Virus record (IMG/VR): IMGVR_UViG_3300021963_000021
Span: 248,001-312,000 of that record
DNA length: 64,000 bases
Reading direction: 5' to 3' (one strand)
Shown: positions 4,942 through 58,234 of the stretch, piece by piece
Layout: every line of letters begins with the position of its first letter
Position numbering within the stretch: the stretch's first letter is position 1
Translations under genes and position numbers: made by a program
The notes under the pieces: generated by a model
Seen by the model: only the letters and a program-made list of their open reading frames with translations
Database searches by the model: none
What the model was told of the DNA's origin: nothing

Positions 4942-4970
4942 GAAATATTTATGTGCTACTATAACCCGTG

Positions 4971-4976
4971 TAAATA
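4971..4976 (+). promoter_or_regulatory. T4-type late promoter core TAAATA
   Basis: TAAATA 4 nt before ATG 4981 in a divergent intergenic gap; the motif recurs before many genes. Confidence 0.5.
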
Positions 4977-4980
4977 CTTC

Positions 4981-28711: not shown

Positions 28712-28718
28712 ATATTTC

Positions 28719-29432: not shown

Positions 29433-29561
29433 ACTAAAAGTCTTTAGGTAAGTTTCCATGTCGCTGTTATATGCGATCATCTTGGCTGGTGCCATAAATT
29501 TAAATTGTAGCATCAGCCAAACCGAATAATCAATCCACCAATCTATTGGAGTGTACATCAT
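29385..29561 (-). CDS. Small hypothetical protein
   Basis: MMYTPIDWW start overlaps the cyclase stop (ATGA). Confidence 0.45.
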   Translation of the reverse strand: MMYTPIDWWIDYSVWLMLQFKFMAPAKMIAYNSDMETYLKTFSLNGVKISNLCKPYKT

Positions 29562-31609: not shown

Positions 31610-31631
31610 ATATTTATTGATAAATTACTGT

Positions 31632-32438: not shown

Positions 32439-34486
32439 AATCTAATAATACCGCGTAGGCTTATAGTATTATTATTGATATTGTTGCCTTGCTGTGTTGC
32501 CGCTGTTAAAGCAATAGAACCTTTCTTTGTTGGAGCATAAGCAATAGTAGCAGCACCTGTTGTTACAGAGTCTGTTGTTGTGCCAATATCACCAATTAAG
32601 CGGAAATCGTTAATTGCTTTTTCGTAACGTACACCGGCTTCACCGTATGTGTAGTTGTCTGTAGTTTTAGCTACAGTTCTAGCACTTTGGATGTCACCAG
32701 CTTCTGTGTAACCACCTATTGTCGAACGACCAACAGTAACACCAGCGTAAGGACGGAATCCTTTTGTATCTGGAGCATACACTCTGTTGTTCAACCACAC
32801 ATTGTCACCCTTAGCAGAATGACTGTTGTTAAACACATTTTCTACAGTACGATTGCCTTTGATGTTATTGTCAGCATAACCTAAGTTGTTGACAATAGTT
32901 GCGCCATTTTCTAAGTTGTAAACTGAAAACAATCCAACGTGATTTTTGTCTTGTGCTGTTTTAGAATCTGTGCCATCCATTGTTGTGTTAACACGATTGT
33001 ATTGAGCACCTAGTCTCCAGTTCGGCTTGATTTCTTTTTCAACGCCTAGACCATATATTTGACTATTCGCGTTGTAGCCGTTGTTAATGTTTGCCTTAGC
33101 GCCACTGGCATTTACATACATTGTTATTTTCTTTTCTTCGTCAGTATAACCATCTGTACGGAAAGCATCCATGTTCAATCCACGATCTAACTGTTTGTTT
33201 AGATTGTTCAAGTATGCCATTTGATCAACACGACCACTGAAACTATCGTTAGCAACACTAGTATTAACACTGTTAGACAATGTTGTGTTAGATGTTGTAG
33301 CACTATCAGAGGTTGTTGTAGTACCATCACTCCATGTAGTTGTTGTTCTTACTTTAGTTACTACAGTACGCTCCATTGGAGTAGTTACATTTGTTGTTGT
33401 TTCGCGAGCAATAGTCTGCTTGCCACCAGCTTCGCTGGCATCGTGATGCGCTAGGCTAGCTGTGATCACAGGCAATGTTGTGCTGACTGCTGTTGTATCG
33501 CTGACTGTAATAATTGCTGTTGATGTTCCTGTTACTGTTGGGGTAGCAGGTGTTGTTGGTGCTGACGCTGCTGATGTAGCACTACCAACGTCAACTAATG
33601 TACCGCCACCAGGAGCCGCACCAGGAGTACCGCCACCAGCACCACCGTCAATAGCATAGGTAGCTGCTGCAAAAGCACTTGGTCCAAATATGTAAGCATA
33701 GTTCCAAGTAAGTATGTCGCCTACTGATACGTTAGCAGCATAAAAACCAATACCAATAGTGTCATCAGCTCGTTTAACATCAACTGTGCCGCCACTGTAG
33801 TAATTTTTAGGATCGCTGGTCCAACCTTGTATAGCAGTATTGACGTTGCCGGATTGCGATGAATATAATCCTAAAGCATAGCGGCTCACAGTTGCTTCTG
33901 AGAACACTACGTTAGTCTTAGGAATAACACCGTAACCACGAACGTTGTCAGTTGCTGAACTATCGCCAGGTGCTGCTACAGCATCTGGATCAATGTAACG
34001 ACCAAAATATAAATGTGGCATTGCTGTTTTAGCATCTAGTCGTGTAGTAATGTCTAGATATTTCTGTGCTGAAGGTAAACTGTATGTATGACGTATATCA
34101 AATTCTGTAGCACTACCAGCCCATACTGCTGAGCTTGCTGTAGGTGTTCCTACCCAAGCACCTGATACAGCAGTATTGCCATCCATTTGAAATCCGGCAT
34201 TATTATTACCGTACAGTTTGAGTTTTGTTCCTGTTGAATCATCAATTCGCACAGCCCAACCCTCATAAGGTGAACCTGGCGTTAGATAATCGTAGCTAGG
34301 GTTAAATGTTCCAGTTCCTGTATTGTCATACTGTAGTCCTGGTTTAGTGTTTCCACCACTTCCAAGTGTACCTGTCGTTTCGTTTACACCTGCTTTGATG
34401 TATTCATTCTGTAGTATTGAATTGCCGGCCAAAGCAGACGTTGATATAATTGTGGCCAAGAGACCACTTATAATAGTTTTTTTCAT
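32435..34486 (-). CDS. Autotransporter-like outer-membrane beta-barrel protein
   Basis: Signal peptide, Thr-rich linker, C-terminal amphipathic strands ending in Phe. Confidence 0.7.
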   Translation of the reverse strand: MKKTIISGLLATIISTSALAGNSILQNEYIKAGVNETTGTLGSGGNTKPGLQYDNTGTGTFNPSYDYLTPGSPYEGWAVRIDDSTGTKLKLYGNNNAGFQMDGNTAVSGAWVGTPTASSAVWAGSATEFDIRHTYSLPSAQKYLDITTRLDAKTAMPHLYFGRYIDPDAVAAPGDSSATDNVRGYGVIPKTNVVFSEATVSRYALGLYSSQSGNVNTAIQGWTSDPKNYYSGGTVDVKRADDTIGIGFYAANVSVGDILTWNYAYIFGPSAFAAATYAIDGGAGGGTPGAAPGGGTLVDVGSATSAASAPTTPATPTVTGTSTAIITVSDTTAVSTTLPVITASLAHHDASEAGGKQTIARETTTNVTTPMERTVVTKVRTTTTWSDGTTTTSDSATTSNTTLSNSVNTSVANDSFSGRVDQMAYLNNLNKQLDRGLNMDAFRTDGYTDEEKKITMYVNASGAKANINNGYNANSQIYGLGVEKEIKPNWRLGAQYNRVNTTMDGTDSKTAQDKNHVGLFSVYNLENGATIVNNLGYADNNIKGNRTVENVFNNSHSAKGDNVWLNNRVYAPDTKGFRPYAGVTVGRSTIGGYTEAGDIQSARTVAKTTDNYTYGEAGVRYEKAINDFRLIGDIGTTTDSVTTGAATIAYAPTKKGSIALTAATQQGNNINNNTISLRGIIRF

Positions 34487-34545
34487 ACCGATTTCGCTCC
34501 CGGTTAGTATAGTTATTTAAAGGGAAGGCAGAAAAAATTAAACTA

Positions 34546-35643
34546 TCACTTTTGAGTTATGCTGATGGTACTGGTAGCACCTTTATTAACCTGTTGAACA
34601 ACCTGTTGGCCGTCTTGGTTAATACTCAAGGTAGTATTTTGAGTAGTGGGTAGTGTAACTGTGGCATTATGATTTGTTACACGATATAATGTTATCTTAC
34701 TTTGGTCTTCGTTAAAGTAATAGAGTAAACCACTGGAGGCATTGTAGTTAGGTAGCAAGGCAACATCTATTTCATTGCTTAATAGTGTTTTGTTTTGTGC
34801 GTCAAGTTCATTCCAACTATAAAATGCCAATAGGTCAGCATTAAGGTCATTTCTATCTAATGCTCTGTTGTCGTCAAGTTTATTTTCATCTAGTTTGGTG
34901 AACTTTAATAGATCAACATCTAGTTTATCAAAATCTAATAGACCTCTTTCTTTCAATGCTTTTCTATGTTCGTTACCGTCGTCTTGTATTTCTGGTGGCT
35001 TGCTGATAATCAGCATATTGTTTATGTTAGCTTGATCTAGTTTTACTACCACAGGCTGGCTAGGAGTCTGATAAGCAGACACAACCATAGTTGCCTGATA
35101 GGGTACATCTAATATCACGACTCCGCCTTCGTTGCGTACTTCAATGGCACCTGTCACACAGCCTTTGCTGTCGCAGCTAGGTAACAGCACTATTAGACTG
35201 CGACCCATTTCGTCTACGGTCATAGAGAAGTCTGTACCACGAACACCTACACTGGCTGTGGGAGTGTTGATTGCTACCTGTTGTGGATTGTTTTTAGCTA
35301 TCTGTCCACTGGCATACCGAGCTGTGCCTAGTGTTAATTTCATAGCCAGTTTACCTGATCCTTTGTTAGGATCGTAGACGAAATCATCTATGACTATCTT
35401 ACTGTGTTCGTTTATTTTCACAGTGGTTTTATCGTCAAAGGTCAGCTGTGCTGTAGCCTTGGCAGTTGAAATTGCGTCATTCATTTCAACTGCCGTGTTT
35501 AGGCTAGATGCTATAGATTTTTTAGACCTTAATATTTCCGTTGGGCCAGTTTGTTCAGTTACTTTACCTACACCCGCCCAGAGATTAGTCTGACTGAGTG
35601 ACAGAAATATTAACGCCAGCGCCTGAGCTAGTGATATTCGCAT
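34546..35643 (-). CDS. FecR-domain protein
   Basis: Signal peptide; LTFDDKTTVKINEHS; TPTASVGVRGTDF; C-terminal curlin-like INQ/ITQ strands. Confidence 0.88.
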   Translation of the reverse strand: MRISLAQALALIFLSLSQTNLWAGVGKVTEQTGPTEILRSKKSIASSLNTAVEMNDAISTAKATAQLTFDDKTTVKINEHSKIVIDDFVYDPNKGSGKLAMKLTLGTARYASGQIAKNNPQQVAINTPTASVGVRGTDFSMTVDEMGRSLIVLLPSCDSKGCVTGAIEVRNEGGVVILDVPYQATMVVSAYQTPSQPVVVKLDQANINNMLIISKPPEIQDDGNEHRKALKERGLLDFDKLDVDLLKFTKLDENKLDDNRALDRNDLNADLLAFYSWNELDAQNKTLLSNEIDVALLPNYNASSGLLYYFNEDQSKITLYRVTNHNATVTLPTTQNTTLSINQDGQQVVQQVNKGATSTISITQK

Positions 35644-36247
35644 TCTTCGCAGTCGCTCCCGATTGTGTTAGGACTATTTGATTAGGTGATGAAACAGTCG
35701 ATGTGCTAGTAATAGCAATTTCACCTCTGTGAGCTCCTGCTCCTGTTTGTGTATGCGAAACGGTGTTGTAGTTTCCAACGATATCTATTTTGCTGAAATA
35801 GGCACCAGACCCTGTTAGAGTCTGTGTTACCGCGTTATTATCACCTAATATGTCTTGTCTAATTACGGACGCATTACATGAAGCATTTAGAGCAGTACCG
35901 CACTCTACAGTTGACACGTTGTCACTGCCTAACTGATTGATAGTTAGGGCTGTACCTGTGCCTACACCGCCTAGATTAGGATTGTTCAATGATAGTGATA
36001 TCAAGTTACCGACACCAACTTGTTGTATATTAACGGTATTGCCACCACCACCGATATATGCGTTGTCGCCTGTGTTTAACCCTTCTATCTTATTACTGGC
36101 ACCATCCTGAAGGATAGTCACAGCCGTATCGTCACCGACTTGCTCGATATAAAGGTCATTGGCTAACGATACTCCTGAGAATAGTAATGTTGCCATCAAG
36201 GCAATTGTGCTAGGTTTGCCTATTATACCCGTCATTCTTTTTTTCAT
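35585..36247 (-). CDS. Curlin-repeat (CsgA/CsgB-like) protein
   Basis: Signal peptide and repeated I-x-Q-x-G-x-x-N units. Confidence 0.8.
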   Translation of the reverse strand: MKKRMTGIIGKPSTIALMATLLFSGVSLANDLYIEQVGDDTAVTILQDGASNKIEGLNTGDNAYIGGGGNTVNIQQVGVGNLISLSLNNPNLGGVGTGTALTINQLGSDNVSTVECGTALNASCNASVIRQDILGDNNAVTQTLTGSGAYFSKIDIVGNYNTVSHTQTGAGAHRGEIAITSTSTVSSPNQIVLTQSGATAKNANITSSGAGVNISVTQSD

Positions 36248-36278
36248 TTCGCTCCACCTTGATCATCTGCTGATCTTG

Positions 36279-37406
36279 TTATTTTTTCACTTCTAGTTGT
36301 ATGCTTTCTCTCTTAACATATCCTTTCTTGCCGTCCTCGGCAATGATCTTAATCCACTCCCCTTGCTCTTCTTCTACTTGTATTGCTGTGTTCTTTGTAA
36401 ACAACCAAACTCGGGTCGAGGTTTCGTTAGGTTCTCTCCTAACATAATGCGTGTCCTTCATTACTGCTTTTTTACCTACTAGTGTGTCTGTGTTCTTTTT
36501 TTCTGCGGCAGGAGTCTCTCCCTGCTTATCTAACGTTGGGAATCGAACCCAATCATCTTTTTTATCTTCTGTCTTCAAAGGAAATTCCTGGCTTGCGGAA
36601 CTTTCGGAAACTGCGGGGTGTTGACGCATAGGAGTTTTAAAACGCCAAATTCCTTTTTTCTCACCTTCGATAATCATATCAAATACTGCCTGTTCAATTG
36701 CTACACGAACAGCATAAGTTGTTGGTTCATTTAACGCAGCACCATTTTCCAATTCAACTGCTTTAGTACCTGCGTCCACAAATCGTAGTACACCTACGTT
36801 ATGCTGTGTACTGTAAATTGTTTTGCTCACTGAAGTAGTCAATAGCACTTCGCCTGAGCTTACGCTTATTAGACGTATAGAAACTACTATCTCATCAACG
36901 CGGTATTGTTGGCTTCCACCTATGCCTAGGAATCTTGCTCCACTACCGCCCGAGCGGATGTTGCTGTCAAATCCTATAATGCCTCCCTCGATCATAGCAC
37001 CTGCTACGGTCATTGGCTTTAAAGGTTTGGCATCCTTGCCTTCATAAACTTCACGTTGATTGCGTATCAGCTGACGTTCTTTGATAAGATTATCTAAGCC
37101 CACACGCTCTACTACACGGAACCAACTAGGAGTATCCTGTAGACTTTTAATTAAAAATACTTCAGCACCCTGTGTTACTGCTTTACTAAAAACAGCTAAC
37201 CTATCGTTGGGTTTCATTTGTCCTGTTTTATCAGTGAACCCGTATACCGCAATGGTCATTGGCGGTCCTTCTAGGGGAGGTATCCTGTTGTATAGATTTT
37301 CTTTTGGCTTAACAGCTATCGGTTCTTCTTTGACCAATTCCATTTGTACACTGGCACACCCAGATAACAAAGTAGCTATCAGCGATAATAAAATTAATTT
37401 TTTCAT
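36279..37406 (-). CDS. csgG: CsgG curli secretion channel with C-terminal SH3-like domain
   Basis: Lipobox LLSGC; AVYGFTDKTGQ; FRVVERVGLDNLIKERQLIR; C-terminal VRREP...GEWIKI...GYV. Confidence 0.9.
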   Translation of the reverse strand: MKKLILLSLIATLLSGCASVQMELVKEEPIAVKPKENLYNRIPPLEGPPMTIAVYGFTDKTGQMKPNDRLAVFSKAVTQGAEVFLIKSLQDTPSWFRVVERVGLDNLIKERQLIRNQREVYEGKDAKPLKPMTVAGAMIEGGIIGFDSNIRSGGSGARFLGIGGSQQYRVDEIVVSIRLISVSSGEVLLTTSVSKTIYSTQHNVGVLRFVDAGTKAVELENGAALNEPTTYAVRVAIEQAVFDMIIEGEKKGIWRFKTPMRQHPAVSESSASQEFPLKTEDKKDDWVRFPTLDKQGETPAAEKKNTDTLVGKKAVMKDTHYVRREPNETSTRVWLFTKNTAIQVEEEQGEWIKIIAEDGKKGYVKRESIQLEVKK

Positions 37407-37852
37407 TAGAACGCAAAGCTCGCTATAGGTACAGTAATTTCTGTACGACTACCATTTGACTCAATGATAGTTAAAGTAACTTCAGTTCCGGTTTTAACCC
37501 AGCTGATGTTTGTTCCCTGGAAATTCATAGTTCCGTTGCTTGCTCCGCCCTCAGCAAATAACTGATCAGCTAACTGTTTAGATAACTGCGCATATATCCT
37601 TGCTTCAACGTTGACCAAGAACTTAGATAAGTTGCTGTTCTTTTTGGCCAATTCAGCTGCGTCAGCAGCGGCTTTGGCGTCATCTTTGATTTTTTGTCTG
37701 CGCTGGGATTCTAGCTGCTCGATAGCCAATACGTGAGAAGAGTACCCGTTACCTGGTATAAACGATGGGCTTTGGAAAGTATGTACTAGTTCAGCAGCAC
37801 TGGCATTAGATAAGCATACTACCGCTAGTAAGATACCGATTTTCTTATACAT
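37406..37852 (-). CDS. csgF: CsgF-like curli assembly protein
   Basis: Signal peptide then ELVHTFQSPSF; RIYAQLS..L..QLF; adjacent to csgG. Confidence 0.8.
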   Translation of the reverse strand: MYKKIGILLAVVCLSNASAAELVHTFQSPSFIPGNGYSSHVLAIEQLESQRRQKIKDDAKAAADAAELAKKNSNLSKFLVNVEARIYAQLSKQLADQLFAEGGASNGTMNFQGTNISWVKTGTEVTLTIIESNGSRTEITVPIASFAF

Positions 37853-39017: not shown

Positions 39018-39698
39018 TTACCTGATTTCTGGAAACAGACAATCCTGTATAAACACACTTACATCGTCTTCGCTGAGCCCTAGACTAACCATTACACGCG
39101 GTGTGTGCGGGTTTTGCTTTTGATTTTGAGCGTAGAAGTTTTGCTCAAATGTAGTGTCTGCTACTTTGTTGTTAGTTTCGCCTACAGTTTCTAGATAATG
39201 ATTTATCAGTATATGTGCTAGGCTACTGATCTGTGCTAGTTCGTGTTCGTCACTGACATTGCCAGCAGCTATCATACTGGTACTGAATATGCGCTGCGCC
39301 CAGTCTGGAAGCTCTCTTTTTTTGATCCATTCATATCTGCTGACTTCTTCAGCAAAATATTCTATCATAGGATGTGTACGATCTGCGGTAGGGCTGTAGT
39401 CAATAAAACAGCCCGTGATCTTATTTTTTCCTGCGATCACATCGAACCCAAAAATAGGTGCCGGGTTATGGGTATGCGGGAATATACAACAGTGCATCAT
39501 CCAGAGGCCCTTTGTGGATCGGGCGTCAACTACATCGACGTGAGCTCTTCGATAATTTTCACTAGTCCAAACACGGTTAACCCATCCCGGCTGATTGAAT
39601 CGCGACATCCCGGGCTCGTGTACTTCAACACCCGTTTTGCCAAATTGATCTTCCAACAGGTGTTGGATATCAATTAGAGTTGACCAAACTTGACTCAT
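39018..39698 (-). CDS. pcyX: Ferredoxin-dependent bilin reductase, PcyX type
   Basis: Counted residues D55, M67, H69, C71, D86 plus C-terminal NPH match phage PcyX as recalled; adjacent heme oxygenase. Confidence 0.85.
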   Translation of the reverse strand: MSQVWSTLIDIQHLLEDQFGKTGVEVHEPGMSRFNQPGWVNRVWTSENYRRAHVDVVDARSTKGLWMMHCCIFPHTHNPAPIFGFDVIAGKNKITGCFIDYSPTADRTHPMIEYFAEEVSRYEWIKKRELPDWAQRIFSTSMIAAGNVSDEHELAQISSLAHILINHYLETVGETNNKVADTTFEQNFYAQNQKQNPHTPRVMVSLGLSEDDVSVFIQDCLFPEIR

Positions 39699-40855: not shown

Positions 40856-41296
40856 TTACTTAACCTCAACCACTTCAATAATACGTGGTTTCAGCTCTTC
40901 TGGGACGATTCTTTCCAGTTTAACTGTTAAGATCCCGTCTTTGATTTCTGCGCCTTGTACTTTGATGTGCTCAGCAAGCGGAAATACTCTGTTAAAATTA
41001 CGTGAAGCTAGCCCACGATGTAGATACTGGATTTCAGCATTTTCATCGATCTCAGCTTTTTCGCCTTTAATGGTAAGCTCGTTATCTTCCAAAGAAACGG
41101 TTACTTCATTCTTGGCAAAGCCGGCCACAGCTACTTCGATCAAGTAAGTGTTCTCACCTGTACGAATTATGTTGTGTGGAGGATAGTTGTTAGATACTTG
41201 ATTTGCGAAACGACGCTCGAGTTGATCGAACATAGTATCAAAACCAATTAGTGCTCTATTTAGAGCGTTTGGGTCGAAACGATTAATTGCATTCAT
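40856..41296 (-). CDS. Small heat shock protein (Hsp20/IbpA family)
   Basis: NYPPHNI, IEVAVAGF, YLHRGLASRNF, A...DGILTV; start reassigned to ATG 41296 with AAGGAG. Confidence 0.95.
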   Translation of the reverse strand: MNAINRFDPNALNRALIGFDTMFDQLERRFANQVSNNYPPHNIIRTGENTYLIEVAVAGFAKNEVTVSLEDNELTIKGEKAEIDENAEIQYLHRGLASRNFNRVFPLAEHIKVQGAEIKDGILTVKLERIVPEELKPRIIEVVEVK

Positions 41297-41352
41297 GTTT
41301 ATCTCCTTATGATTAAGCAAGAGTTTCATGAAGGCCCCACCTGGGCACCTTC
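41297..41352 (-). promoter_or_regulatory. ROSE-like RNA thermometer of hsp20
   Basis: UCUUGCUU pairs with AAGGAGA leaving a bulged G; upstream hairpin GAAGG-UGCCCAGGUGGG-G-CCUUC. Confidence 0.7.
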
Positions 41353-41363
41353 ATTATAATAAT

Positions 41364-41392
41364 ATTATACAATCTCTGTGTGTGTTTGTCAA
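41364..41392 (-). promoter_or_regulatory. sigma70 promoter of hsp20
   Basis: TTGACA-17 nt-TATAAT exact. Confidence 0.88.
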
Positions 41393-43263
41393 TCTGTTTG
41401 TTTGAAGTCAGCATCCACTACAGTTTCACCTTCTGTTTTGGATTCTTCTTTTTTGGCTTTCAAATCAAACAATGGCTTGGTGGCAGCAAACAAGTCACTG
41501 ATCTTTTCAGATATTTTGTCCTTGTCGGTTCCTTTGAGTTCTTCTTCAAGAGCCTTAACAGCATCTTCAAGTTTGCTTTTTTCTTCTTCAGATAACTCGG
41601 AACTAAACTGCTCAATATCTTTCTTGATAGAATGGATCTGTGCTTCTGCTTGATTTTTAGTTTCAATCAGATCACGTGCCTTCTTATCTTCCTCGGCATT
41701 GATTTCTGCGTCACGGATCATATTTTGGATCTCTTCGTCAGACAATCCGCTGTTGGCTTTGATCGTGATCTTGTTTTCTTTGCCTGTGTTTTTGTCCTTG
41801 GCACTTACTTTTAAAATACCATTAGCATCAATATCTAGTGTAACTTCGATCTGTGGAGTACCACGAGGTGCCGGAGCAATACCTTCTAGATTAAATTCGC
41901 CTAAGAGTTTGTTGTGTTGTACAAGCTCACGCTCGCCTTGGAACACTTTGATTGTAACAGCAGGCTGATTGTCGTCAGCTGTTGAGAATGTCTGTGACTT
42001 CTTAGTTGGGATCGTTGTGTTCTTGTCAATCAACTTGGCCATTACACCGCCCATTGTTTCAATACCTAGGCTCAATGGAGTAACGTCAAGTAACAGAACG
42101 TCTTTGCGATCGCCTGCTAGAACAGCACCTTGGATGGCAGCGCCGACAGCAACTGCTTCGTCTGGGTTAACGTCTTTACGTGGTGCTTTGCCGAACAGTT
42201 TCTCAACTGCTTCCTGTACCTTAGGCATACGTGTCTGTCCACCAACAAGAATAATCTCATCAATGTCAGCTGGAACAACACCAGCATCTTTCATAGCAGT
42301 ACGGCAAGGAGTCAACGAACGCTCAATGAGATCTTCGACTAGGCTTTCTAACTTGCTGCGTGTAAGTTTAACAATCAAATGCTTAGGACCACTAGCGTCA
42401 GCAGTGATGTATGGCAAGTTAACTTCTGTTTGATTGTTGCTAGACAATTCAATCTTTGCTTTTTCAGCTGAATCTTTCAAACGCTGTAATGCCAGTGTGT
42501 CATTCTTAAGATCGACACCTTGTTCTTTCTTGAACTCGTCGACCAAATAATCCATGATACGTTGGTCAAAGTCTTCGCCGCCCAGGAATGTATCACCGTT
42601 GGTGCTCAGTACTTCGATCTGTTTGTCGCCATCTACGTTAGCAATGTCGATGATACTAACGTCAAATGTACCACCACCAAGATCGTATACAGCAACCTTA
42701 CGATCCTTGCTGTCACGCTTGTCTACTCCATATGCTAGAGCAGCCGCAGTTGGCTCATTGATAATACGTAGTACTTCTAGGCCAGCAATCTTACCAGCAT
42801 CCTTGGTTGCCTGTCTTTGGCTGTCGTTAAAGTAAGCAGGTACTGTGATAACAGCCTGTGTTACTTCGTGGCCCAGATAGTCTTCAGCTGTGGACTTCAT
42901 CTTGCGAAGAACTTCTGCTGAAATTTGTGGGGGTGCTAAATTATTGCCCTGTGCTTCAATCCAAGCATCACCGTTCTTTGCTTCAGTGATTTTGAATGGC
43001 ATTAGGTCTATGTCTTTTTGTACAGCCTGTTCTTTGAACTTACGTCCGATTAAACGCTTGGCTGCGTAGATAGTGTTCTTGGCATTAGTCACTGCTTGAC
43101 GTTTTGCTGGAGCACCTACTAGGATTTCATCGTTAGCGTAGGCAACGATACTAGGCGTAGTTCTTGCGCCTTCTGAGTTTTCTAATACTTTGGGGATTCC
43201 GTTTTCAATAACGGCTACACATGAATTTGTGGTACCCAAGTCGATACCGATGATTTTACTCAT
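41389..43263 (-). CDS. dnaK: Chaperone DnaK (Hsp70)
   Basis: [42 protein letters not shown]; full length. Confidence 0.98.
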
Positions 43264-49242: not shown

Positions 49243-49271
49243 AGTATACGCTCTTTCAAAGATAAAGTCAA
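49243..49271 (-). promoter_or_regulatory. sigma70 promoter
   Basis: TTGACT-17 nt-TATACT. Confidence 0.8.
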
Positions 49272-49294
49272 GAAAAAGCCCACCGAAGTGGGCT
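49272..49294 (-). terminator. Rho-independent terminator of pqqA
   Basis: AGCCCAC-UUCG-GUGGGCU followed by a U-tract. Confidence 0.9.
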
Positions 49295-49312
49295 CTTGTA
49301 TGATAAGAACAA

Positions 49313-49384
49313 TTATCTGTTCATTACATACATGGTTACTTCAAATCCGTAACGCATTTCAACTGCTTCTGGTTTTGTCCACAT
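49313..49384 (-). CDS. pqqA: PQQ precursor peptide PqqA (23 aa; not in ORF track)
   Basis: Hand translation MWTKPEAVEMRYGFEVTMYVMNR*; MW.KP...R.GFEVTMY signature; AAGGAG RBS; own terminator. Confidence 0.93.
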   Translation of the reverse strand: MWTKPEAVEMRYGFEVTMYVMNR

Positions 49385-49510
49385 AGTCGTTCTCCTTTGT
49401 TCAACAAATTTAAAAACATACTGTCTGTGTAACTGTATGTATCTATATTGTATAGGAAAAAACGTCTATTTCACATACAGAAGATCATTAAAAGATACTA
49501 GCTAGGCTCT

Positions 49511-50129: not shown

Positions 50130-50489
50130 TTAAGCCTGTCGAGTTAGATAGCTAATTCTGACATTATCTGCGCCAAAATATTCCATAACGCTGGCTTCAC
50201 AGACTTCTATGGCAAATTCCTTACAACTAAAGATATCGATGTAAGCATGTCCAAAACTAGGAACGAAATGCCCAGTGATACTGGAAGTCTCGATTAACTG
50301 TACCAAACTGTAGCCTGCCTTGGCAGGATCATGTTCGGCAAAATATTCGATAATGGGCTCACCGTAGGCCTTCATATCGATACGGCTAACCAATCTCTTA
50401 ACAAAGGCTTCGATGTTTTCTCGATCGTTGATAAGATCGACATCGCAACCTGAACAGTCTAACATCAAATGATAACCCCAATATGCCAT
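50130..50489 (-). CDS. speD: S-adenosylmethionine decarboxylase family proenzyme
   Basis: GYHLMLD, IETSSITGHF self-cleavage region, YIDIFSCK. Confidence 0.9.
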   Translation of the reverse strand: MAYWGYHLMLDCSGCDVDLINDRENIEAFVKRLVSRIDMKAYGEPIIEYFAEHDPAKAGYSLVQLIETSSITGHFVPSFGHAYIDIFSCKEFAIEVCEASVMEYFGADNVRISYLTRQA

Positions 50490-50511
50490 TTCTTTCTCCT
50501 TTTGGCAAATG

Positions 50512-50537
50512 GAACAGGCTACCGAAGTAGCCTGTTC
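50512..50537 (-). other. 11-bp C(UUCG)G hairpin downstream of tmRNA
   Basis: GAACAGGCTAC-TTCG-GTAGCCTGTTC; no U-tract. Confidence 0.75.
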
Positions 50538-50539
50538 TG

Positions 50540-50830
50540 GAAGTTTCTGTTGCTAGGTATTCCTACCCCAGGCAGGGTTTAAGCTGCCAATGCGTAAACG
50601 TTGTCGTTTGCGTTTAGTTTGTTTGCTTGATTTAGGGTCATCGCCTACCCTGCTGTCCACTTTGATACTCAATACCCTGTCGAACCTAATTCAGGCCCAT
50701 CAAAAGCACTTCTCGATTTACATTCCCCCGAATACATCATTTCTGGTTCGGCTAATACGCAAATGCTTTTGGTGGACCTGGCCGGTACTGCCCCGGCGTC
50801 CAGAACACCTTTTTCATTGCTTCACACAGC
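50540..50830 (-). ncRNA. ssrA: Circularly permuted (two-piece) tmRNA; outer ends approximate
   Basis: T-arm GCCGG-GGCAGTA-CCGGC then CAGGTCC-A-CCA ending 50770; 5' end GGGCCTG at 50698 gives G3:U70; tag ANDNVYALAA* at 50611-50579. Confidence 0.92.
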
Positions 50831-50870
50831 AATAATACTATTTAACAGTCTTTGTTGACAGTTGTCAACC

Positions 50871-51497
50871 TTAAATTTTGAGTTCACTATTTCCGCCTGG
50901 CCCAATTATGCCTCTTGGAAATACATTGAAAGCCAAACTGTAACGATTCTCTTTGGAAAGATTTTCTAAAACACTGTGATTTAACAGAGATGGAAATAAC
51001 AATAATGTATTGTTTTCGGGAGATATGCCCATGTCCGAATTGTACTCTGTGTCTTTGCCGTTGTCAATACAAAAAGTATCACGCCAGAGATTGGTATGTC
51101 CTCTTTCTCTATGGAAACAGATAGCACCCGAATTGGCAGGAACTTTTGGGTACCAAACTCCACTGATCATGCTGTTGCTGTGCCAGTGCATGTCATGTTT
51201 GCCGCCAGTCATTGCTAGATTTAACCAACTGGTCGTAATTTCCCAGCGTTGGTCACGTGTGGCACCTATTACTTCGTGTACGAAATAGTCTATGTGTTTC
51301 TGTATCTGAGACTTGAGTCCTTTCAATTGAGAAGCGTCAAGCAGAGTTCGTTTCGGTGATTCGAGGTGCGTATAACTCGTTTCGTCAAAGTTACTGACTT
51401 CGAGATTCATGAGGTACTCAAATGCTATAGGATCTATGCTGTCTGTCTTGGTCTGATAGACAGGTATAGGCCAAAGATTGTGTACCTTATAGTTCAT
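50871..51497 (-). CDS. Putative 2OG-Fe(II) oxygenase (TIGR02466-like)
   Basis: SWLN...HWHSNSMISGVWY...LLFPSLLNHSV...RYSLAFN. Confidence 0.85.
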   Translation of the reverse strand: MNYKVHNLWPIPVYQTKTDSIDPIAFEYLMNLEVSNFDETSYTHLESPKRTLLDASQLKGLKSQIQKHIDYFVHEVIGATRDQRWEITTSWLNLAMTGGKHDMHWHSNSMISGVWYPKVPANSGAICFHRERGHTNLWRDTFCIDNGKDTEYNSDMGISPENNTLLLFPSLLNHSVLENLSKENRYSLAFNVFPRGIIGPGGNSELKI

Positions 51498-53374: not shown

Positions 53375-54475
53375 TTATAATGCTGGTAATTCGTCATAGT
53401 CAATGGTATCGCTCATGACACCTATAACATAATTAGTCGACTCGTTCTCTTGGAGCGCAGTTTGTTTCTTATGGGTATCACTGTGTTTATTGAACCAAGG
53501 TATTGGTGTTGTTTTTGGAGCAGGCTGTTGATACTTGATGCCAATATCTTTTAGGGCGGCCGCAGCAGTATAGTCTACGAAGTCTTTTAGAATGTTAGCA
53601 TTAAGTCCAATAACAGGACCTTTCTTGAACAAGTAGTCTGCCCATTCTTTTTCTTCACGGATAACATCTTCATAGAGAGCATAAACTTCAGCTTCACATT
53701 CTTCTTTGGCTTTGACAAATCTAGGATCTTCTTTGACTACCTGATTGATCAAATAAGCAGTCCAACCTTTGTGTAGCAGTTCGTCTTGTAGGATCAAGCT
53801 GATGATGTTGCCATTACCAATAAAGATCTTGTTCTCTACCATTGCCAAACTTGTGGCAAACGACACCATAAAGCGGAACGCTTCTAGAGCATAGCTGGCA
53901 TGTAGTGCTAGCCAAATTGCTTTGATGTGTGTTGCTTCATTGATTTTTTCGCCTGTTTCTTTACGGCAGTTAATCAAATGTAAATCATCGTAATAACGGC
54001 CGACACTTGATGCCATGTCTACAATTTCTTTAGTGTCGTGGATTGTGTTAAACACTTCCTTAGGCACGTTGTATATGTTACGGATGATATGGCTGTATGA
54101 ACGACTGTGGATGTTAGTCTCAAAGAAACCCCAGTTATACATCAGTGCTTCTACTTCCGGTAAACTACATACAGGAGTAAACACCTGAGTTGGTCCACGA
54201 CCCTGGATACTGTCCAAGGCTGTCTGTCTTAATAGGTTACTGGTAAAGATATGTTTAACAGCATCGCTAGAATCTTTAAAGTCGCTGGCATCTTTGGACA
54301 AACTGATCTCTTCAGGTACCCAAAAGAACCCACGTGCGGTTGTTTCAAAATTCTGTACCTTAGGATACTTGACTTCTTCAAATCGTTGAATAGTCACTGG
54401 ACCCTCTGGATCCAAGAACATCTTACGACTTAGGTAGTCTGTTTTAGTGGTTAGATTGTATTGTGCTGTACTCAT
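53375..54475 (-). CDS. nrdB: Ribonucleotide reductase class Ia beta subunit
   Basis: LDSIQ, ETNIHSRSY, LEAFRF, DELLH iron ligands and radical Tyr. Confidence 0.97.
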   Translation of the reverse strand: MSTAQYNLTTKTDYLSRKMFLDPEGPVTIQRFEEVKYPKVQNFETTARGFFWVPEEISLSKDASDFKDSSDAVKHIFTSNLLRQTALDSIQGRGPTQVFTPVCSLPEVEALMYNWGFFETNIHSRSYSHIIRNIYNVPKEVFNTIHDTKEIVDMASSVGRYYDDLHLINCRKETGEKINEATHIKAIWLALHASYALEAFRFMVSFATSLAMVENKIFIGNGNIISLILQDELLHKGWTAYLINQVVKEDPRFVKAKEECEAEVYALYEDVIREEKEWADYLFKKGPVIGLNANILKDFVDYTAAAALKDIGIKYQQPAPKTTPIPWFNKHSDTHKKQTALQENESTNYVIGVMSDTIDYDELPAL

Positions 54476-54738
54476 TGTTTATCCTGTTTTGTTAATTCAG
54501 TAGTATTCCAAATATTTCTATTATGAACAACCTTGTCTTTTAGTATTCTTATAACTTTCTCTTTCTCAGTTTCGGTCCATATAAAATGTAAACTATTTAA
54601 CGGCGGTCTACCTGTTGTTTCATCGTACAAAGACTTATGTTGGTAGTATGATTTTAACCACACCCATTGTCCACTAGTGACTTTGACAGGCTTCCATGCA
54701 AATAGTTTACTTTCCATAATTTCCAGAAGCCAGAACAA
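54472..54738 (-). CDS. Hypothetical protein
   Basis: FAWKPVKVTSGQWVWLKSY. Confidence 0.6.
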   Translation of the reverse strand: MFWLLEIMESKLFAWKPVKVTSGQWVWLKSYYQHKSLYDETTGRPPLNSLHFIWTETEKEKVIRILKDKVVHNRNIWNTTELTKQDKQ

Positions 54739-55369
54739 TCTTACAAATGTGTTCTAATCTTTCAATATGTTCGTACGCTCGCCACGGAGTCGTATCGATA
54801 GCAACTACACCGTGTCCTTTAATGCCTACAATATCGTAGGCAACATTACCGTCTCTATCTAGTTGAAGATTCGTGTGGCACTGATCCGCAAGCTCTTGAC
54901 TAATAGGCGGAACATCTCCGACATTGGGTGCTACTCGAGTATAACGGTTAAGCTCCGGAAAAGCATCACTGATAGTACTAAGGTCGATACCGGCATGCAT
55001 AGCCGCAATACTGTAAGTAGGATGTACATGTACAACTACTCTTACCTCGTCCTTATGCTGACCCATTTCTTTTTGTAGACCAAAATGTAATGGTATCTCT
55101 CCGCTAGGTACTAGATTTTTACTGATGTCAGTATAGGGTACATCTTCCCAAGAGTAGTTGAATGCCGCTGTTCCATATCCACTATGGATGCTTCTGTGTA
55201 TAGCTATCTTCTTAAATTGGTCAGGTTGTAGTGTTTGCTTACGCACACCGCTTGGAGTAATGTAGAAGTGATCACGATCATGATGACGGATGCTGACGTT
55301 GCCATCACGACTGGTAATCCAATTACGCTTATAAGCGTCTACCATAATATCACATATCGTTTCTAACAT
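54707..55369 (-). CDS. Class II aldolase/adducin family protein
   Basis: DGNVS, ITPSG, PSGEIPLH, HVHP, GHG. Confidence 0.92.
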   Translation of the reverse strand: MLETICDIMVDAYKRNWITSRDGNVSIRHHDRDHFYITPSGVRKQTLQPDQFKKIAIHRSIHSGYGTAAFNYSWEDVPYTDISKNLVPSGEIPLHFGLQKEMGQHKDEVRVVVHVHPTYSIAAMHAGIDLSTISDAFPELNRYTRVAPNVGDVPPISQELADQCHTNLQLDRDGNVAYDIVGIKGHGVVAIDTTPWRAYEHIERLEHICKIVLASGNYGK

Positions 55370-55901
55370 TTACATAATCCCAGTTTATTATTTTCCATTG
55401 ATTTTCTAAATACTTTTTCTTGTCGTGTTGATAATCCAACGCCCAAGCATGTTCCCACCAATCAACTAATACTACTATATCTTTTTTTATTTCGTGATTC
55501 TTTATAGTTTTAATTTCGCCAGACTTAGAAAGATATACCCACCCACTACCTTGTATGCTCATGGCCACTTTGGTAAATTCTTCTTTAAACTTATCAAAGG
55601 ATTTAAATTTTTCTTCAATAAGTTCTAGGGTCTTGCCGGATGGCTTATTGCTAGATTTTGGTGCTTGATATTGTTGGAACAGTATGTTATGTAAGAACAC
55701 GCCAGCTTCATTGAAGTCAGGGTCACCTTCGCCTTTGTTGTATCTGTCAGCATAGGTATGAGCTAGTTTACCATAGTGATAATCGATAGTATCCTCTGAT
55801 ATCGACGGATCTAGATCATCCTTGTCGTATGGCAATGCTTTGATTTCTAATTTCTCAGCTTTGCCCTCTAACAGAAAATTTCGTATAAAGTTATAGGTCA
55901 T
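55350..55901 (-). CDS. sod: Fe/Mn superoxide dismutase
   Basis: LPY...IS..TI.YHY; FLHN; GSGW; DWWEHAW. Confidence 0.9.
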   Translation of the reverse strand: MTYNFIRNFLLEGKAEKLEIKALPYDKDDLDPSISEDTIDYHYGKLAHTYADRYNKGEGDPDFNEAGVFLHNILFQQYQAPKSSNKPSGKTLELIEEKFKSFDKFKEEFTKVAMSIQGSGWVYLSKSGEIKTIKNHEIKKDIVVLVDWWEHAWALDYQHDKKKYLENQWKIINWDYVNVRNDM

Positions 55902-58234
55902 AACTTACACGCCTCGCAATCATCTTCTAGTTCTTCGTTATGATACCCGTTGACTTCTTTTTCTACATAAGCAGGTTCAGCATCCTGTGCCTTAGATCCA
56001 TGCTTGTTGATCAAGCTGTAATAGAATGTCTTCAATCCCCACATCTGTGCTTGCATTAAATTCTTAGCAATCAATGTGGTAGGAACTTTTCTGTCAGCGA
56101 ACCAAGCAGGATTGTAGAATGTGTTTGTAGAAATACTTTGGTCAACATATGCTGCCAATACTGCGGCAGTTTTTAGATATCCAACGCAGTCTTTCTGTTC
56201 CCACATTAATTGATACTTGTTCTTTAACTTGTGATAGTCTGGTACTACCTGTGTAAATGATCCTGCCTTTGATTCCTTAGTAGAAATCAAACTCATCGGA
56301 AGTTCAATACCATTGGTAGAATTAATAACCACACTACTGCTTTCCACAGGAGCAATAGCCATAAGTGTCGCATTTCTAACACCATACTGTTTCATGTCCT
56401 TTCTTAGAGGTTCCCAATCTAGTTCAGGTTTGAAGTTAGTAAGCTCATTAACGCCTTTGGCACGTAGTTCCCAAGGAAACTTGCCTTGACCGTATCGTGT
56501 CTTATCGCTGTCTTTACATGGGCCACGTTCTTTGGCCAATTCAACTGTAGCTTCAGTGAGATAGAACGCTTGGTGTTCCATCCAAGATTTAACATCTTGT
56601 AGAGCATCCTTGTCACCGTAACGTAGTCCACGTTTGGCATGCCAGTAGGCTAAGTTTGTAACACCAATGCCCAGTGGTTGTATCTCATCGTTAGACAGTT
56701 TGCTCTGTATCGACAGGAAGTCTTGATAGTCTAGAATATTACATAGACTACGCTGTAATATGCGACATGCTCTACGCATGTCTTCTGGGTTACGGAACGC
56801 ACCCCAGTTAATGGATCCCAGTGTACATAACGCTATGCGCCCCTCCGCGTCGTCTAATCTCTTAAATGGACGGGTTGGTAATAAGATCTCACAGCACAAG
56901 TTACTTTGATAGATGGTATGATACTCAGGATCGAAAGGACCTTGATTCATGACATTATCAATAAACACCAAATAGATGCGACCTGTGTCTGTACGTTCCT
57001 TCAAGATGCCGCTTTTGAATACTTCTTCAGCTGACATTGTTTTCTTGCGTAGGTCTTTACGCTTTTCATACTCTGTGTATAGTTTTTCAAAACGTTCTGT
57101 ATTTTGATAAAACGCTTCATATAGTTCTGGTACTTCGTTAGGGTCGAAGAATGTTATGTTTTCTTTATTCCTGAATCGTCTCCAGAAAAATGCTGACAAA
57201 ACAACTCCGTAATCCATATGTCGTACCCGTGTTTCGTCTGTGCCTTGATTATTCTTAAGAACAATAAGATCATCAAACTGATAATGCCAAATGGGATAAA
57301 ACACAGTAGCACTAGCATTACGGATTCCTCCCTGTGAGCACGAACGCAGATCACCAAACCATTTTTTAAGGAACGGAATCATGCCAGTGTGCATAATTTC
57401 ACCACCTCTGATGGGGCTACCCAATGGACGTAGTCTGCCAATCTCCAAACCAATGCCAGCACGTTTGCTGGCATACTTGGCCATCATTTCGCCACTAGCA
57501 AAAATGGAGTCAAGATCATCATCACTACGAATGAGTACACAGCTACTGAACTGCTTAGTGGGAGTCCCAAGGCCAGCAAGAACAGGAGTAGCGAGAGTAA
57601 ATAGACCGTCTGAAGCCGCATTGTAGTATTCCTTGATAAATTTCATTCGAGCACTGTTAGGCTCTTCTTTGTGAAACACTGTAGCCGCAGCTACCATATA
57701 ACGAACCTGTGGTGTTTCGTAAATTTCTTTAGTAGCACGATTGCGTACTAGATATTTTTCTATTAGTTGTTCAATGCTGGCATAACCGTACTGCTCATCT
57801 TTTTCGTGATCGAGCATGGCATCCATTTTATCCCAATCGTCTTCGCTGTACCAAACAAGAAGTTCAGGAGTATAAAGACCTACTTCAATATTCTTTTTAA
57901 TGATGTCGTAGAGGCGCGGAGGGGTATAGGTTCCATATACATCTTTTCTCAGCATACTAAGACGTTGCTTACCTGCTACATATTGGTAATTGGTATGTCC
58001 TACACCCGGATTAGATTCTACATCAATTAGGTCTACTATGGCTCTTAATGTTAGAGAATCAATTGCTTGTGTTGTGATGCCATCATAAAAATGCGGACTT
58101 GCTTTGATTTCTATCATTGACTGACTGACGTCAGCTATACCTTTACATACTTTTGCTACCTGCGCTTGCCACTTTTCGATCATTAGTGGTTCTTTTGTTC
58201 CATCTCTTTTAATTACTGTGATAATGTCGTTCAT
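55898..58234 (-). CDS. nrdA: Ribonucleotide reductase class Ia alpha subunit with ATP cone
   Basis: VIKRDG ATP cone, SSC, SNLCCEI, KTFYY, C-terminal CEAC. Confidence 0.98.
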   Translation of the reverse strand: MNDIITVIKRDGTKEPLMIEKWQAQVAKVCKGIADVSQSMIEIKASPHFYDGITTQAIDSLTLRAIVDLIDVESNPGVGHTNYQYVAGKQRLSMLRKDVYGTYTPPRLYDIIKKNIEVGLYTPELLVWYSEDDWDKMDAMLDHEKDEQYGYASIEQLIEKYLVRNRATKEIYETPQVRYMVAAATVFHKEEPNSARMKFIKEYYNAASDGLFTLATPVLAGLGTPTKQFSSCVLIRSDDDLDSIFASGEMMAKYASKRAGIGLEIGRLRPLGSPIRGGEIMHTGMIPFLKKWFGDLRSCSQGGIRNASATVFYPIWHYQFDDLIVLKNNQGTDETRVRHMDYGVVLSAFFWRRFRNKENITFFDPNEVPELYEAFYQNTERFEKLYTEYEKRKDLRKKTMSAEEVFKSGILKERTDTGRIYLVFIDNVMNQGPFDPEYHTIYQSNLCCEILLPTRPFKRLDDAEGRIALCTLGSINWGAFRNPEDMRRACRILQRSLCNILDYQDFLSIQSKLSNDEIQPLGIGVTNLAYWHAKRGLRYGDKDALQDVKSWMEHQAFYLTEATVELAKERGPCKDSDKTRYGQGKFPWELRAKGVNELTNFKPELDWEPLRKDMKQYGVRNATLMAIAPVESSSVVINSTNGIELPMSLISTKESKAGSFTQVVPDYHKLKNKYQLMWEQKDCVGYLKTAAVLAAYVDQSISTNTFYNPAWFADRKVPTTLIAKNLMQAQMWGLKTFYYSLINKHGSKAQDAEPAYVEKEVNGYHNEELEDDCEACKL

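What the first reader, a model, noticed from the sequence alone, without database searches (positions are those of the whole stretch)
49272..49400. Phage-encoded stand-alone pqqA: a RiPP cofactor precursor as its own expression unit
Seen: the minus strand at 49384-49313 translates to MWTKPEAVEMRYGFEVTMYVMNR*, with AAGGAG 7 nt upstream and a UUCG-loop Rho-independent terminator downstream. It is too short for the ORF track. Established: PqqA is the ~23-aa precursor whose Glu and Tyr (E-x-x-x-Y, here EVTMY) are cross-linked by the radical SAM enzyme PqqE to make PQQ, the cofactor of methanol dehydrogenases (MxaF/XoxF). No pqqB-E genes are recognisable in this window. Inference: the phage supplies the stoichiometrically consumed substrate to the host PQQ pathway to boost methanol oxidation during infection, or acts as a decoy for PqqD/E. 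The ...EM R(F/Y) GFEVTMYVMN ending resembles Methylophilaceae PqqA as I recall it, which points to a methylotroph host. I cannot verify how novel this is.
Basis: partly seen in the sequence, partly recalled or inferred. Interest (0 to 1): 0.88.

Follow-up and report, generated by a model that had tools for sequence, protein, structure and literature searches.

The report
Phage copy of PQQ precursor gene
A large phage of methanol-eating Methylophilaceae bacteria carries its own selection-maintained copy of the 23-residue peptide that the host converts into the cofactor PQQ; this is real and common in such phages, but it was already reported from Lake Baikal viruses in 2020.

Summary
Window 49384-49313(-) encodes a 23-aa PqqA that passes both curated models (PF08042 35.9 bits, cut-off 21.1; TIGR02107 34.9, cut-off 20). 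It has AAGGAG 7 nt upstream and a UUCG-loop terminator (-17.3 kcal/mol, z -4.3).

The window is the accessory region of a Melnitz/HTVC008M-like myophage. It has no pqqB-E. The closest bacterial PqqAs are all Methylophilaceae.

The gene is not rare. All nine Methylophilales/Methylophilaceae phage records that the phage collection returned carry it, mostly unannotated. At least 591 IMG/VR contigs carry it, in about 28-34 unrelated contexts, and never with pqqB-E. Viral copies are under purifying selection (pN/pS 0.15), and 79 of 80 have a Shine-Dalgarno.

The stand-alone unit is the normal host arrangement: 80 of 89 host copies sampled are orphans and 86% have their own terminator. The phage copies also keep a host-type upstream box (core ATGATTTTCA).

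Most likely role, inferred and not shown: the peptide feeds the host PqqD/E/B/C pathway to sustain PQQ for methanol dehydrogenase during infection.

The idea was published by Coutinho et al. 2020. Its generality, and the host-type control box, do not appear in the papers I could search.

The parts
49474..49491 (-). Upstream box TTAATGATCTTCTGTATG, the window's version of the clade consensus TTAATGATTTTCACTATG. It is related to the host pqqA box TCATGATTTTCATGA. Candidate operator or UP-like element.
   Evidence: Conserved across 13 syntenic relatives. Occurs once in the window. The core ATGATTTTCA with at most 1 mismatch is found upstream of 47% of viral and 53% of host pqqA copies, against about 4% of background windows. 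The window's own box has 2 mismatches to that core.
49447..49452 (-). -10-like hexamer TACAAT (TATAAT in most relatives). There is no good -35; the box ends where the -35 would be.
   Evidence: Promoter function is inferred, not shown.
49416..49440 (-). Leader inverted repeat ACATAC ... GTATGT followed by a T-run. It would lie at or near the 5' end of the transcript.
   Evidence: Conserved in sequence in relatives. RNAalifold predicts no consensus structure, and the pair count shows no compensatory change in register: inconclusive.
49392..49397 (-). Shine-Dalgarno AAGGAG, 7 nt before the ATG.
   Evidence: An SD-like motif is present in 79 of 80 viral copies.
49313..49384 (-). pqqA coding sequence: 23 codons plus stop, with the cross-link residues Glu15 and Tyr19.
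   Evidence: pN/pS 0.15; third codon positions vary at 20 of 23 sites and second positions at 6 of 23.
49268..49297 (-). Intrinsic terminator: GC stem, UUCG loop and T-run.
   Evidence: An equivalent hairpin plus T-run is present in most syntenic relatives.
49243..49271 (-). Sigma-70-like promoter TTGACT-17-TATACT for the next gene, directly after the terminator. It marks the downstream end of the pqqA unit.
   Evidence: The cTTGAC box after the terminator is conserved in most relatives. The next gene, 49211-48819, is a full-length member of the phage-only family phrog_27048.

Best explanation
This is a host-derived auxiliary gene. It is a complete copy of a Methylophilaceae orphan pqqA unit (control region, RBS, 23-codon ORF, terminator) carried by a large Melnitz-like myophage. 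Host RNA polymerase transcribes it, probably through the same upstream box that host pqqA copies carry, and the peptide is translated. The host's own PqqD/PqqE cross-link Glu15 to Tyr19, and the host's protease, PqqB and PqqC finish PQQ. Each PQQ molecule uses up one PqqA peptide, and Methylophilaceae already hold 3-12 pqqA copies against a single pqqBCDEFG cluster. The precursor is therefore the cheapest lever on PQQ output. A phage copy would keep precursor supply going when host gene expression declines, and so sustain PQQ-dependent methanol dehydrogenase and energy supply during infection. What is shown: family membership, phage location, absence of pqqB-E, purifying selection, recurrence, and a shared cis-element. 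What is inferred: transcription, processing by host enzymes, and any benefit to the phage.
For: Identity: both curated PqqA models are passed. W2, T3, P5, E15 and Y19 are invariant in 7 phage copies, and E and Y are kept in all 80 IMG/VR copies. Phage location: the neighbours hit phage-only PHROGs. Homologues of the Melnitz/HTVC008M cyclase and CsgF/G cluster are present. About a dozen IMG/VR contigs are syntenic at roughly 70% nt identity. None of 80 host pqqA loci shares two or more proteins with any of 206 viral loci. Selection: pN/pS is 0.147 with pS 0.59, and viral copies with identical peptides still differ at 8-10% of nucleotides. Recurrence: all 9 Methylophilales/Methylophilaceae phage records returned from 50,697 records carry it, and their pqqA neighbourhoods share 0-1 proteins with one another. 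At least 591 IMG/VR contigs carry it, in 28 components or 34 communities. Dependence on the host pathway: no pqqB-E in the window, in complete Melnitz, or in 199 viral loci. Host parallel: 80 of 89 host copies are orphans and 75 of 87 have their own terminator. Hosts carry 3-12 copies (PMC4109929). In a methylotroph production strain an orphan copy is among the most expressed and tracks the PQQ synthesis rate, and that paper cites work in which added PqqA was converted to PQQ by cell extract at 70-80% (PMC9851590). Shared control box.
Against: There are no expression, peptide or PQQ measurements for any phage copy. PQQ is a stable, reusable cofactor, so it is not obvious that new synthesis limits a single infection. 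Engineering studies report that raising PQQ yield is not simply a matter of more precursor (PMC9851590). The OM43 hosts of Melnitz are grown with PQQ added to the medium (PMC9004378), so the benefit may depend on conditions. The window's F12Y substitution next to the cross-linked Glu was seen only in viral copies, and its effect on PqqD/E recognition is unknown. No methanol dehydrogenase gene is present in this window.
Confidence: 0.68

Rival explanations
1. Decoy or inhibitor. The phage peptide is made in excess to tie up PqqD/PqqE or the processing protease. This would shut down host PQQ synthesis or divert radical-SAM and SAM resources rather than feed the pathway.
For: No pqqB-E accompanies the gene in any phage. 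The window's clade carries a phage-specific F12Y change beside the cross-linked Glu.
Against: Glu15, Tyr19 and the whole GFE(V/I)TMY core are kept in every viral copy, and most viral peptides are identical or nearly identical to host ones. A binder-only decoy would not need the cross-link residues. Hosts themselves multiply the same peptide (PMC4109929). Lowering energy supply is an unlikely aim for a lytic phage of a slow-growing methylotroph.
Confidence: 0.07
2. PQQ is wanted for something other than methanol dehydrogenase. Examples are another PQQ-dependent dehydrogenase, a phage-encoded quinoprotein elsewhere in the genome, or PQQ as an antioxidant or excreted factor.
For: Only 64 kb of a larger genome is visible. 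Related Baikal viruses carry a methanol dehydrogenase gene of their own (PMC7678222). A minority of IMG/VR PqqA peptides are of other, non-Methylophilaceae types.
Against: About 85% of an unsorted IMG/VR sample is of the Methylophilaceae type. In 50,697 phage records the gene turns up only in methylophages, one spring-water virome contig, and two contigs that are really bacterial chromosome. This ties it to methylotrophy.
Confidence: 0.1
3. Neutral passenger or recombination anchor. The pqqA unit is picked up by chance from the many host copies, or it serves as a stretch of homology or an attachment site for integration at host pqqA loci.
For: Hosts offer many copies as donors. Recombinase genes lie 1.5-2 kb from pqqA in MEP301 and P19250A.
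Against: Synonymous sites are near saturation while the peptide is held constant (pN/pS 0.15). This is the opposite of what an attachment site needs, and it is not neutral. T4-like lytic phages (this window, Melnitz) carry it too. No host pqqA locus has phage-like flanks. The unit keeps its RBS in 79 of 80 cases.
Confidence: 0.05
4. Host contamination or a chimeric assembly. The segment is bacterial DNA joined to phage DNA.
For: The window also holds host-like genes (DnaK, tmRNA, RNR), and mislabelled bacterial contigs do exist in phage databases.
Against: Both flanking genes are phage-type. The same pqqA-terminator-promoter arrangement and a tmRNA 2-6 kb upstream recur in nine independent IMG/VR contigs. 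Plaque-purified isolates carry the gene. GC content is even across the window.
Confidence: 0.01

Closest known systems
PqqA reported in Lake Baikal viral population VP_266, a T4-like virus predicted to infect Methylophilaceae (Coutinho et al. 2020, Microbiome, PMC7678222)
   Same: Same gene, same kind of phage, same predicted host family and same proposed role (boosting PQQ and methanol oxidation). The surrounding auxiliary genes are similar too: radical-SAM proteins, RNR alpha and beta, class II aldolase.
   Different: Those contigs have 35% GC and carry a methanol dehydrogenase gene. This window has 40.8% GC and none. That paper suggested the viral radical-SAM proteins make PQQ; here none of the seven is PqqE. 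It also stated that phage P19250A has none of these genes, yet P19250A does carry an unannotated pqqA.
Orphan pqqA copies of Methylophilaceae chromosomes (Beck et al. 2014, PMC4109929)
   Same: Same peptide type (83-87% identity). Same stand-alone layout with its own terminator and a related upstream box.
   Different: The window's copy sits between phage genes. It has the F12Y change, not seen in the bacterial hits. Its box reads TAATGA...TCAcTA instead of the palindromic TCATGA...TCATGA, and lies closer to the start codon (median 91 against 122 nt).
Unannotated pqqA in cultured methylophages: Melnitz, Venkman, MEP301, MEP401/402, P19250A
   Same: 77-87% identical peptides, each with its own RBS and none with pqqB-E.
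   Different: The genomic contexts are unrelated, sharing 0-1 proteins. Only Melnitz is a relative of this phage, and it is distant: 15 of 95 ORFs have homologues. In Melnitz the gene sits beside tRNA-Leu near baseplate genes, not near the tmRNA.
Cyanophage psbA and other auxiliary metabolic genes
   Same: A host-derived gene for a component that is consumed or turned over in the host's main energy pathway. It is kept under purifying selection and recurs in unrelated phages of one host group.
   Different: At 23 codons it is far smaller. It encodes a substrate (a RiPP precursor), not an enzyme or structural subunit, and it depends entirely on host tailoring enzymes. This analogy is my own, not a tool result.

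Membership tests
PqqA (PF08042 / TIGR02107) | Score above the curated cut-off of the family models | tested here: met
   PF08042 35.9 bits (cut-off 21.1); TIGR02107 34.9 bits (cut-off 20)..
PqqA (PF08042 / TIGR02107) | Short peptide with the Glu-x-x-x-Tyr cross-link pair and an N-terminal W-x-x-P leader | tested here: met
   23 aa, E15-V-T-M-Y19, W2-T-K-P5. These residues are invariant in the phage alignment.
PqqA (PF08042 / TIGR02107) | Linkage to pqqBCDE | tested here: not met
   None in the window, in Melnitz or in 199 viral loci. This is not a defining feature in Methylophilaceae, where 80 of 89 copies are orphans.
PqqA (PF08042 / TIGR02107) | Bound by PqqD, cross-linked by PqqE and converted to PQQ | not testable with these tools
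   Needs biochemistry or genetics.
Viral auxiliary metabolic gene | Lies within a real viral genome, flanked by viral genes | tested here: met
Viral auxiliary metabolic gene | Close homologue of a host metabolic gene | tested here: met
   83-87% identity to Methylophilaceae PqqA. Nearly all of the top 80 bacterial hits are that family or unclassified MAGs.
Viral auxiliary metabolic gene | Maintained by selection in viral genomes | tested here: met
   pN/pS 0.147 over 65 distinct viral coding sequences.
Viral auxiliary metabolic gene | Expressed during infection and alters host metabolism | not testable with these tools
   No transcriptome or metabolite data available.
Moron-type autonomous cassette (own promoter, ORF, own terminator) | Own intrinsic terminator | tested here: met
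   By a strict rule, 31 of 79 viral copies have one.
Moron-type autonomous cassette (own promoter, ORF, own terminator) | Own promoter | tested here: inconclusive
   There is a conserved -10-like hexamer and a conserved upstream box, but no -35 and no mapped transcript start. No terminator separates pqqA from the upstream gene, so read-through is possible.
PqqE (TIGR02109), tested for the window's seven radical-SAM genes | Score above the curated cut-off | tested here: not met
   The only PqqE hit listed is 19.8 bits against 381.35. Three genes instead pass NF033640, the N-terminal twitch radical-SAM family.

The most novel reading that the evidence does not exclude
pqqA may be the signature auxiliary gene of Methylophilaceae phages, and possibly the smallest such gene known. 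It would be acquired many times as a whole host cassette that keeps the host's pqqA operator, so that the phage copy is switched on by the host's own methylotrophy regulation. This would mean that precursor-peptide supply, not the tailoring enzymes, is the step of PQQ and methanol dehydrogenase capacity that phages exploit. It would also make the 72-nt gene a reliable host-prediction marker for methylotroph viruses.
Probability: 0.35. Interest if true: 0.65.

Novelty: new member of a known kind. Interest (0 to 1): 0.45.

Why it matters
Methylophilaceae (OM43, LD28, Methylotenera) are major consumers of methanol in oceans and lakes, and their phages shape that carbon flux. A 23-codon precursor gene carried by most of their known phages would mean that cofactor supply is a pressure point of methylotrophy during infection. 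It would also extend the auxiliary-gene concept from enzymes to a RiPP substrate.

On the practical side, the gene is missed by standard ORF callers. It is unannotated, or overlain by a wrong-strand ORF, in every isolate genome examined. Cultured phage-host pairs already exist in which the hypothesis can be tested. The conserved upstream box offers a way into the unknown regulation of pqqA in these bacteria.

Tried and rejected
- **Nucleotide match to known phages:** a megablast of 20 kb against 50,697 phage records found nothing. Relatives were found only at protein level.
- **Radical-SAM genes as PqqE:** the seven radical-SAM genes at 11-15959 were tested as candidate PqqE and rejected.
- **Upstream element as a general phage promoter:** rejected, because it occurs once in the window.
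- **Upstream element as a small ORF:** a frame starting ATG ATT TTC inside the box was considered. It was rejected on reading the alignment: its length varies from 5 to 18 codons among relatives and it has no RBS.
- **Leader hairpin:** RNAalifold gave no consensus structure, and the pair count showed no compensatory change in register. Left as inconclusive.
- **Strict box pattern:** ATGA-N3-TCA missed all seven isolate copies. A looser core (2 mismatches allowed) found box-like sequences in six of the seven; MEP402 had none.
- **Clustering of viral loci:** single linkage at two shared proteins collapsed into one giant component. It was replaced by a threshold of three shared proteins and by Louvain communities.
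- **Other named methylophages:** I tried to learn whether MEP431-434, HIM624-A, Venkman EXVC038S, MG-MTP1 and RSA-MFP1 lack pqqA. Probes with flanking DNA did not find them in the collection. "Nine of nine" therefore refers only to the records the collection returned.
- **Not attempted:** structure prediction (pointless for a 23-residue peptide) and the large protein searches (query too short).

Full report
**1. The observation**

The minus strand at 49384-49313 reads MWTKPEAVEMRYGFEVTMYVMNR*. AAGGAG lies at 49397-49392, 7 nt before the ATG. Downstream, GAGCCCAC-UUCG-GUGGGCUU plus a T-run (49297-49274) was picked up by the terminator scan. It folds at -17.3 kcal/mol, and none of 200 shuffles folds as well (z -4.3). 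The peptide passes Pfam PqqA (35.9 bits, cut-off 21.1) and TIGR02107 (34.9 bits, cut-off 20). It is the only such ORF in the window.

**2. What the window is**

- The window has 40.8% GC and about 95 closely packed ORFs, mostly on the minus strand.
- There is no nucleotide match to 50,697 phage records.
- At protein level the closest relatives are Methylophilales phage Melnitz (46% identity for the 683-aa cyclase-like protein) and pelagimyophage HTVC008M.
- Only 15 of 95 ORFs have Melnitz homologues: the CsgF/CsgG/FecR cluster, the cyclase, Hsp20 and the cell-wall hydrolase.
- The gene just downstream of pqqA is a full-length member of the phage-only family phrog_27048. Other neighbours are phage-type speD, a 2OG oxygenase and an endolysin-like hydrolase.
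- About a dozen IMG/VR contigs are syntenic with 44-55 kb of the window at roughly 70% nt identity.

The window is therefore the accessory/early region of a large, distant Melnitz-like myophage. It is not bacterial DNA.

**3. No other PQQ genes**

- Genuine PqqB-E from a mislabelled Acinetobacter contig match nothing in the window, or in the complete Melnitz genome, beyond the generic radical-SAM core.
- Methylovorus PqqB-E match nothing at 1e-3 in the window, in Melnitz or in 199 viral loci.
- The window does hold seven radical-SAM genes (11-15959). Three pass the N-terminal twitch family NF033640. The only PqqE model hit listed scores 19.8 bits against a cut-off of 381.
- No ORF resembles a PQQ-dependent methanol dehydrogenase among those scanned, which include every ORF of 422 aa or more.

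**4. Host**

A scan of one genome per species (185,579 species) returned at least 579 relatives. The best 80 are nearly all Methylophilaceae (Methylovorus, Methylophilus, Methylotenera, Methylobacillus, Ca. Methylopumilus) at 83-87% identity, often with several copies per genome. A betaproteobacterial two-piece tmRNA lies 1.1 kb away, which agrees with this host assignment.

**5. How common it is in phages**

- **Deposited phages.** tblastn against the phage collection hit 12 records. Nine are cultured methylophages: Melnitz (four genomes), Venkman, MEP301, MEP401, MEP402 and P19250A. One is a spring-water virome contig. Two are contigs that are really Acinetobacter chromosome.
- **Annotation.** In five of the isolate genomes the frame is unannotated. 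In Melnitz and the spring contig a wrong-strand hypothetical ORF is called over it.
- **Peptide architecture.** All copies share one pattern, MWT(K/S/T)P-x-A-x-EMR(F/Y)GFEVTMY..., each with its own RBS.
- **IMG/VR.** An unsorted sample of 119 loci with the generic GFE(V/I)TMY motif is about 85% Methylophilaceae-type.
- **Context.** The pqqA neighbourhoods of the isolates share 0-1 proteins with one another. The 206 viral loci fall into 28 components or 34 communities. No host pqqA locus shares two or more proteins with any viral locus.

**6. Is it used?**

- Over 65 distinct viral coding sequences, pS is 0.59 and pN is 0.087 (ratio 0.147). Third codon positions vary at 20 of 23 sites and second positions at 6 of 23.
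- Viral copies with the same peptide as the window still differ from it at 8-10% of nucleotides.
- 79 of 80 viral copies have a Shine-Dalgarno.
- Glu15 and Tyr19 are never lost.

This is the signature of a translated peptide under constraint. It does not fit an attachment site or a neutral passenger.

**7. The expression unit is a copy of the host's**

In the 80 host loci, 9 pqqA copies are followed by pqqB and 80 are orphans. The peptides are the same in both groups, and 75 of 87 copies have a terminator-like hairpin. Beck et al. 2014 report 3-12 pqqA copies against a single pqqBCDEFG cluster in Methylophilaceae (PMC4109929).

In the window's clade a roughly 55-nt stretch upstream of pqqA is more conserved than the coding DNA around it: TTTTAATGATTTTCACTATGG ... 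TATAATAAnGATACATACT. It occurs only once in the window.

Host pqqA upstream regions are 18-26-fold enriched for TCATGAT and TCATGAG words that make up a TCATGATTTTCATGA box. The shared core ATGATTTTCA, with at most one mismatch, lies upstream of 53% of host and 47% of viral copies. Only about 4% of background windows have it.

In the phage clade the box ends where a -35 would be, and a TATAAT-like -10 follows (TACAAT in the window, 49452-49447). I read this as a host-type operator or UP-like element. That is an inference. The factor is unknown, and the register differs between host and phage.

An inverted repeat in the leader (49440-49416) is conserved in sequence, but its structure is unproven. 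After the terminator comes a TTGACT-17-TATACT promoter for the next gene, and this too is conserved in relatives.

**8. Mechanism**

The best-supported reading is substrate supply. The phage peptide would be processed by host PqqD/E, the host protease, PqqB and PqqC into PQQ. One peptide is consumed per PQQ molecule (established pathway knowledge; PMC7678222 refs 50-51).

Supporting context comes from a methylotroph production strain with five pqqA copies. There, an orphan copy is among the most expressed and tracks the PQQ synthesis rate. The same paper cites work in which added PqqA was converted to PQQ by cell extract at 70-80% (PMC9851590).

No step from transcription onward has been shown for any phage copy. 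Rival readings are a decoy, PQQ wanted for another purpose, a passenger or attachment site, and contamination. They are weighed in their own sections of this report, and none fits the selection pattern and recurrence as well.

**9. Prior knowledge and novelty**

- Coutinho et al. 2020 reported PqqA in a T4-like Methylophilaceae viral population from Lake Baikal, with the same interpretation.
- A 2026 study lists viral pqqA among phosphate-solubilisation genes.

The finding is therefore a new member of a known kind. What I did not find in the searchable literature:

- The gene is present in every cultured methylophage record the collection returned. The Melnitz, MEP301 and MEP401/402 papers do not mention it. 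The Baikal paper states that P19250A lacks these genes.
- It occurs in dozens of unrelated phage contexts.
- It carries a host-type upstream box.

**10. Verdict**

The gene is real, functional-looking and ecologically interesting, and the hypothesis is testable in existing phage-host cultures. It is neither unprecedented nor unusual in its stand-alone layout. Interest 0.45.

Noticed in passing
window 50510-50888 (-); L012-L014, L018, L023, L027, L033, L034, L042: A betaproteobacterial two-piece (permuted) tmRNA with tag ANDNVYALAA lies 1.1 kb from pqqA. The same gene lies 2-6 kb upstream of pqqA in all nine syntenic IMG/VR relatives. The Melnitz paper describes an alpha-type ssrA with a glutamine riboswitch in Melnitz. 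Here the type matches the host lineage, and no riboswitch was found at gathering threshold.
   Followed up: partly
window 11-15959: Seven radical-SAM genes, three of which pass the N-terminal twitch family NF033640. They are interspersed with an NAD-dependent sugar epimerase/dehydratase, a UDP-glucose dehydrogenase-like gene, 2OG-Fe(II) oxygenases and an Asp/Asn hydroxylase-like gene. None is PqqE. This looks like a sugar or nucleotide modification cluster of unknown product.
   Followed up: partly
window 40856-43263 (-): A phage-encoded DnaK (624 aa, about 68% identical to bacterial DnaK) lies next to an Hsp20 homologue that is shared with Melnitz.
   Followed up: no
window 29558-37852 (-): A CsgF/CsgG/FecR-domain cluster and a 683-aa cyclase-like protein are shared with Melnitz and HTVC008M. 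A second 683-aa protein has an autotransporter beta-domain and no PHROG match.
   Followed up: partly
window 39018-39698 (-): A ferredoxin-dependent bilin reductase homologue (Pfam Fe_bilin_red; weak match to phycocyanobilin:ferredoxin oxidoreductase) in a phage of a non-phototrophic host.
   Followed up: no
window 28686-29432 (+), 50130-50489 (-), 53375-58234 (-), 54707-55369 (-): Further auxiliary genes: fatty-acid desaturase, S-adenosylmethionine decarboxylase, RNR small and large subunits, and a class II aldolase. The aldolase was also noted in the Baikal methylotroph viruses.
   Followed up: no
L001:3995-4066 (Melnitz), L005:621-689 (MEP402), L006:2119-2187 (MW202481), L007, L008 and L009:2501-2569: pqqA is unannotated in MEP401/402, Venkman, MEP301 and P19250A. 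In the four Melnitz genomes and in MW202481 a wrong-strand hypothetical CDS is called over it. The Baikal paper's statement that P19250A lacks these auxiliary genes is therefore incorrect for pqqA.
   Followed up: yes
L010 (CAKLQF020000010.1) and sister contigs: Records named 'Acinetobacter phage MD-2021a' contain chromosomal genes (pqqABCDE, ppk, dnaK, hscA) and appear to be bacterial contigs filed as phage.
   Followed up: partly
window 49382-49349 (codon 12); L011-L090: The Phe12-to-Tyr change (EMRYGFE) appears only in viral copies. None of the top 80 bacterial hits has it, although the search pattern allowed Tyr. It may mark a phage lineage.
   Followed up: partly
L171 and higher (IMG/VR sample): A minority of viral PqqA peptides are of other types, such as ..YExIRLGFE(V/I)TMYFK.. 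and ..QDMRFGFEITMYIANR. These may be phages of other PQQ-making bacteria that also carry lone pqqA genes.
   Followed up: no
window 31610-32434: An 825-nt stretch between the two 683-aa genes has no ORF of 50 aa or more in my ORF map. Rfam at gathering threshold found nothing there.
   Followed up: no
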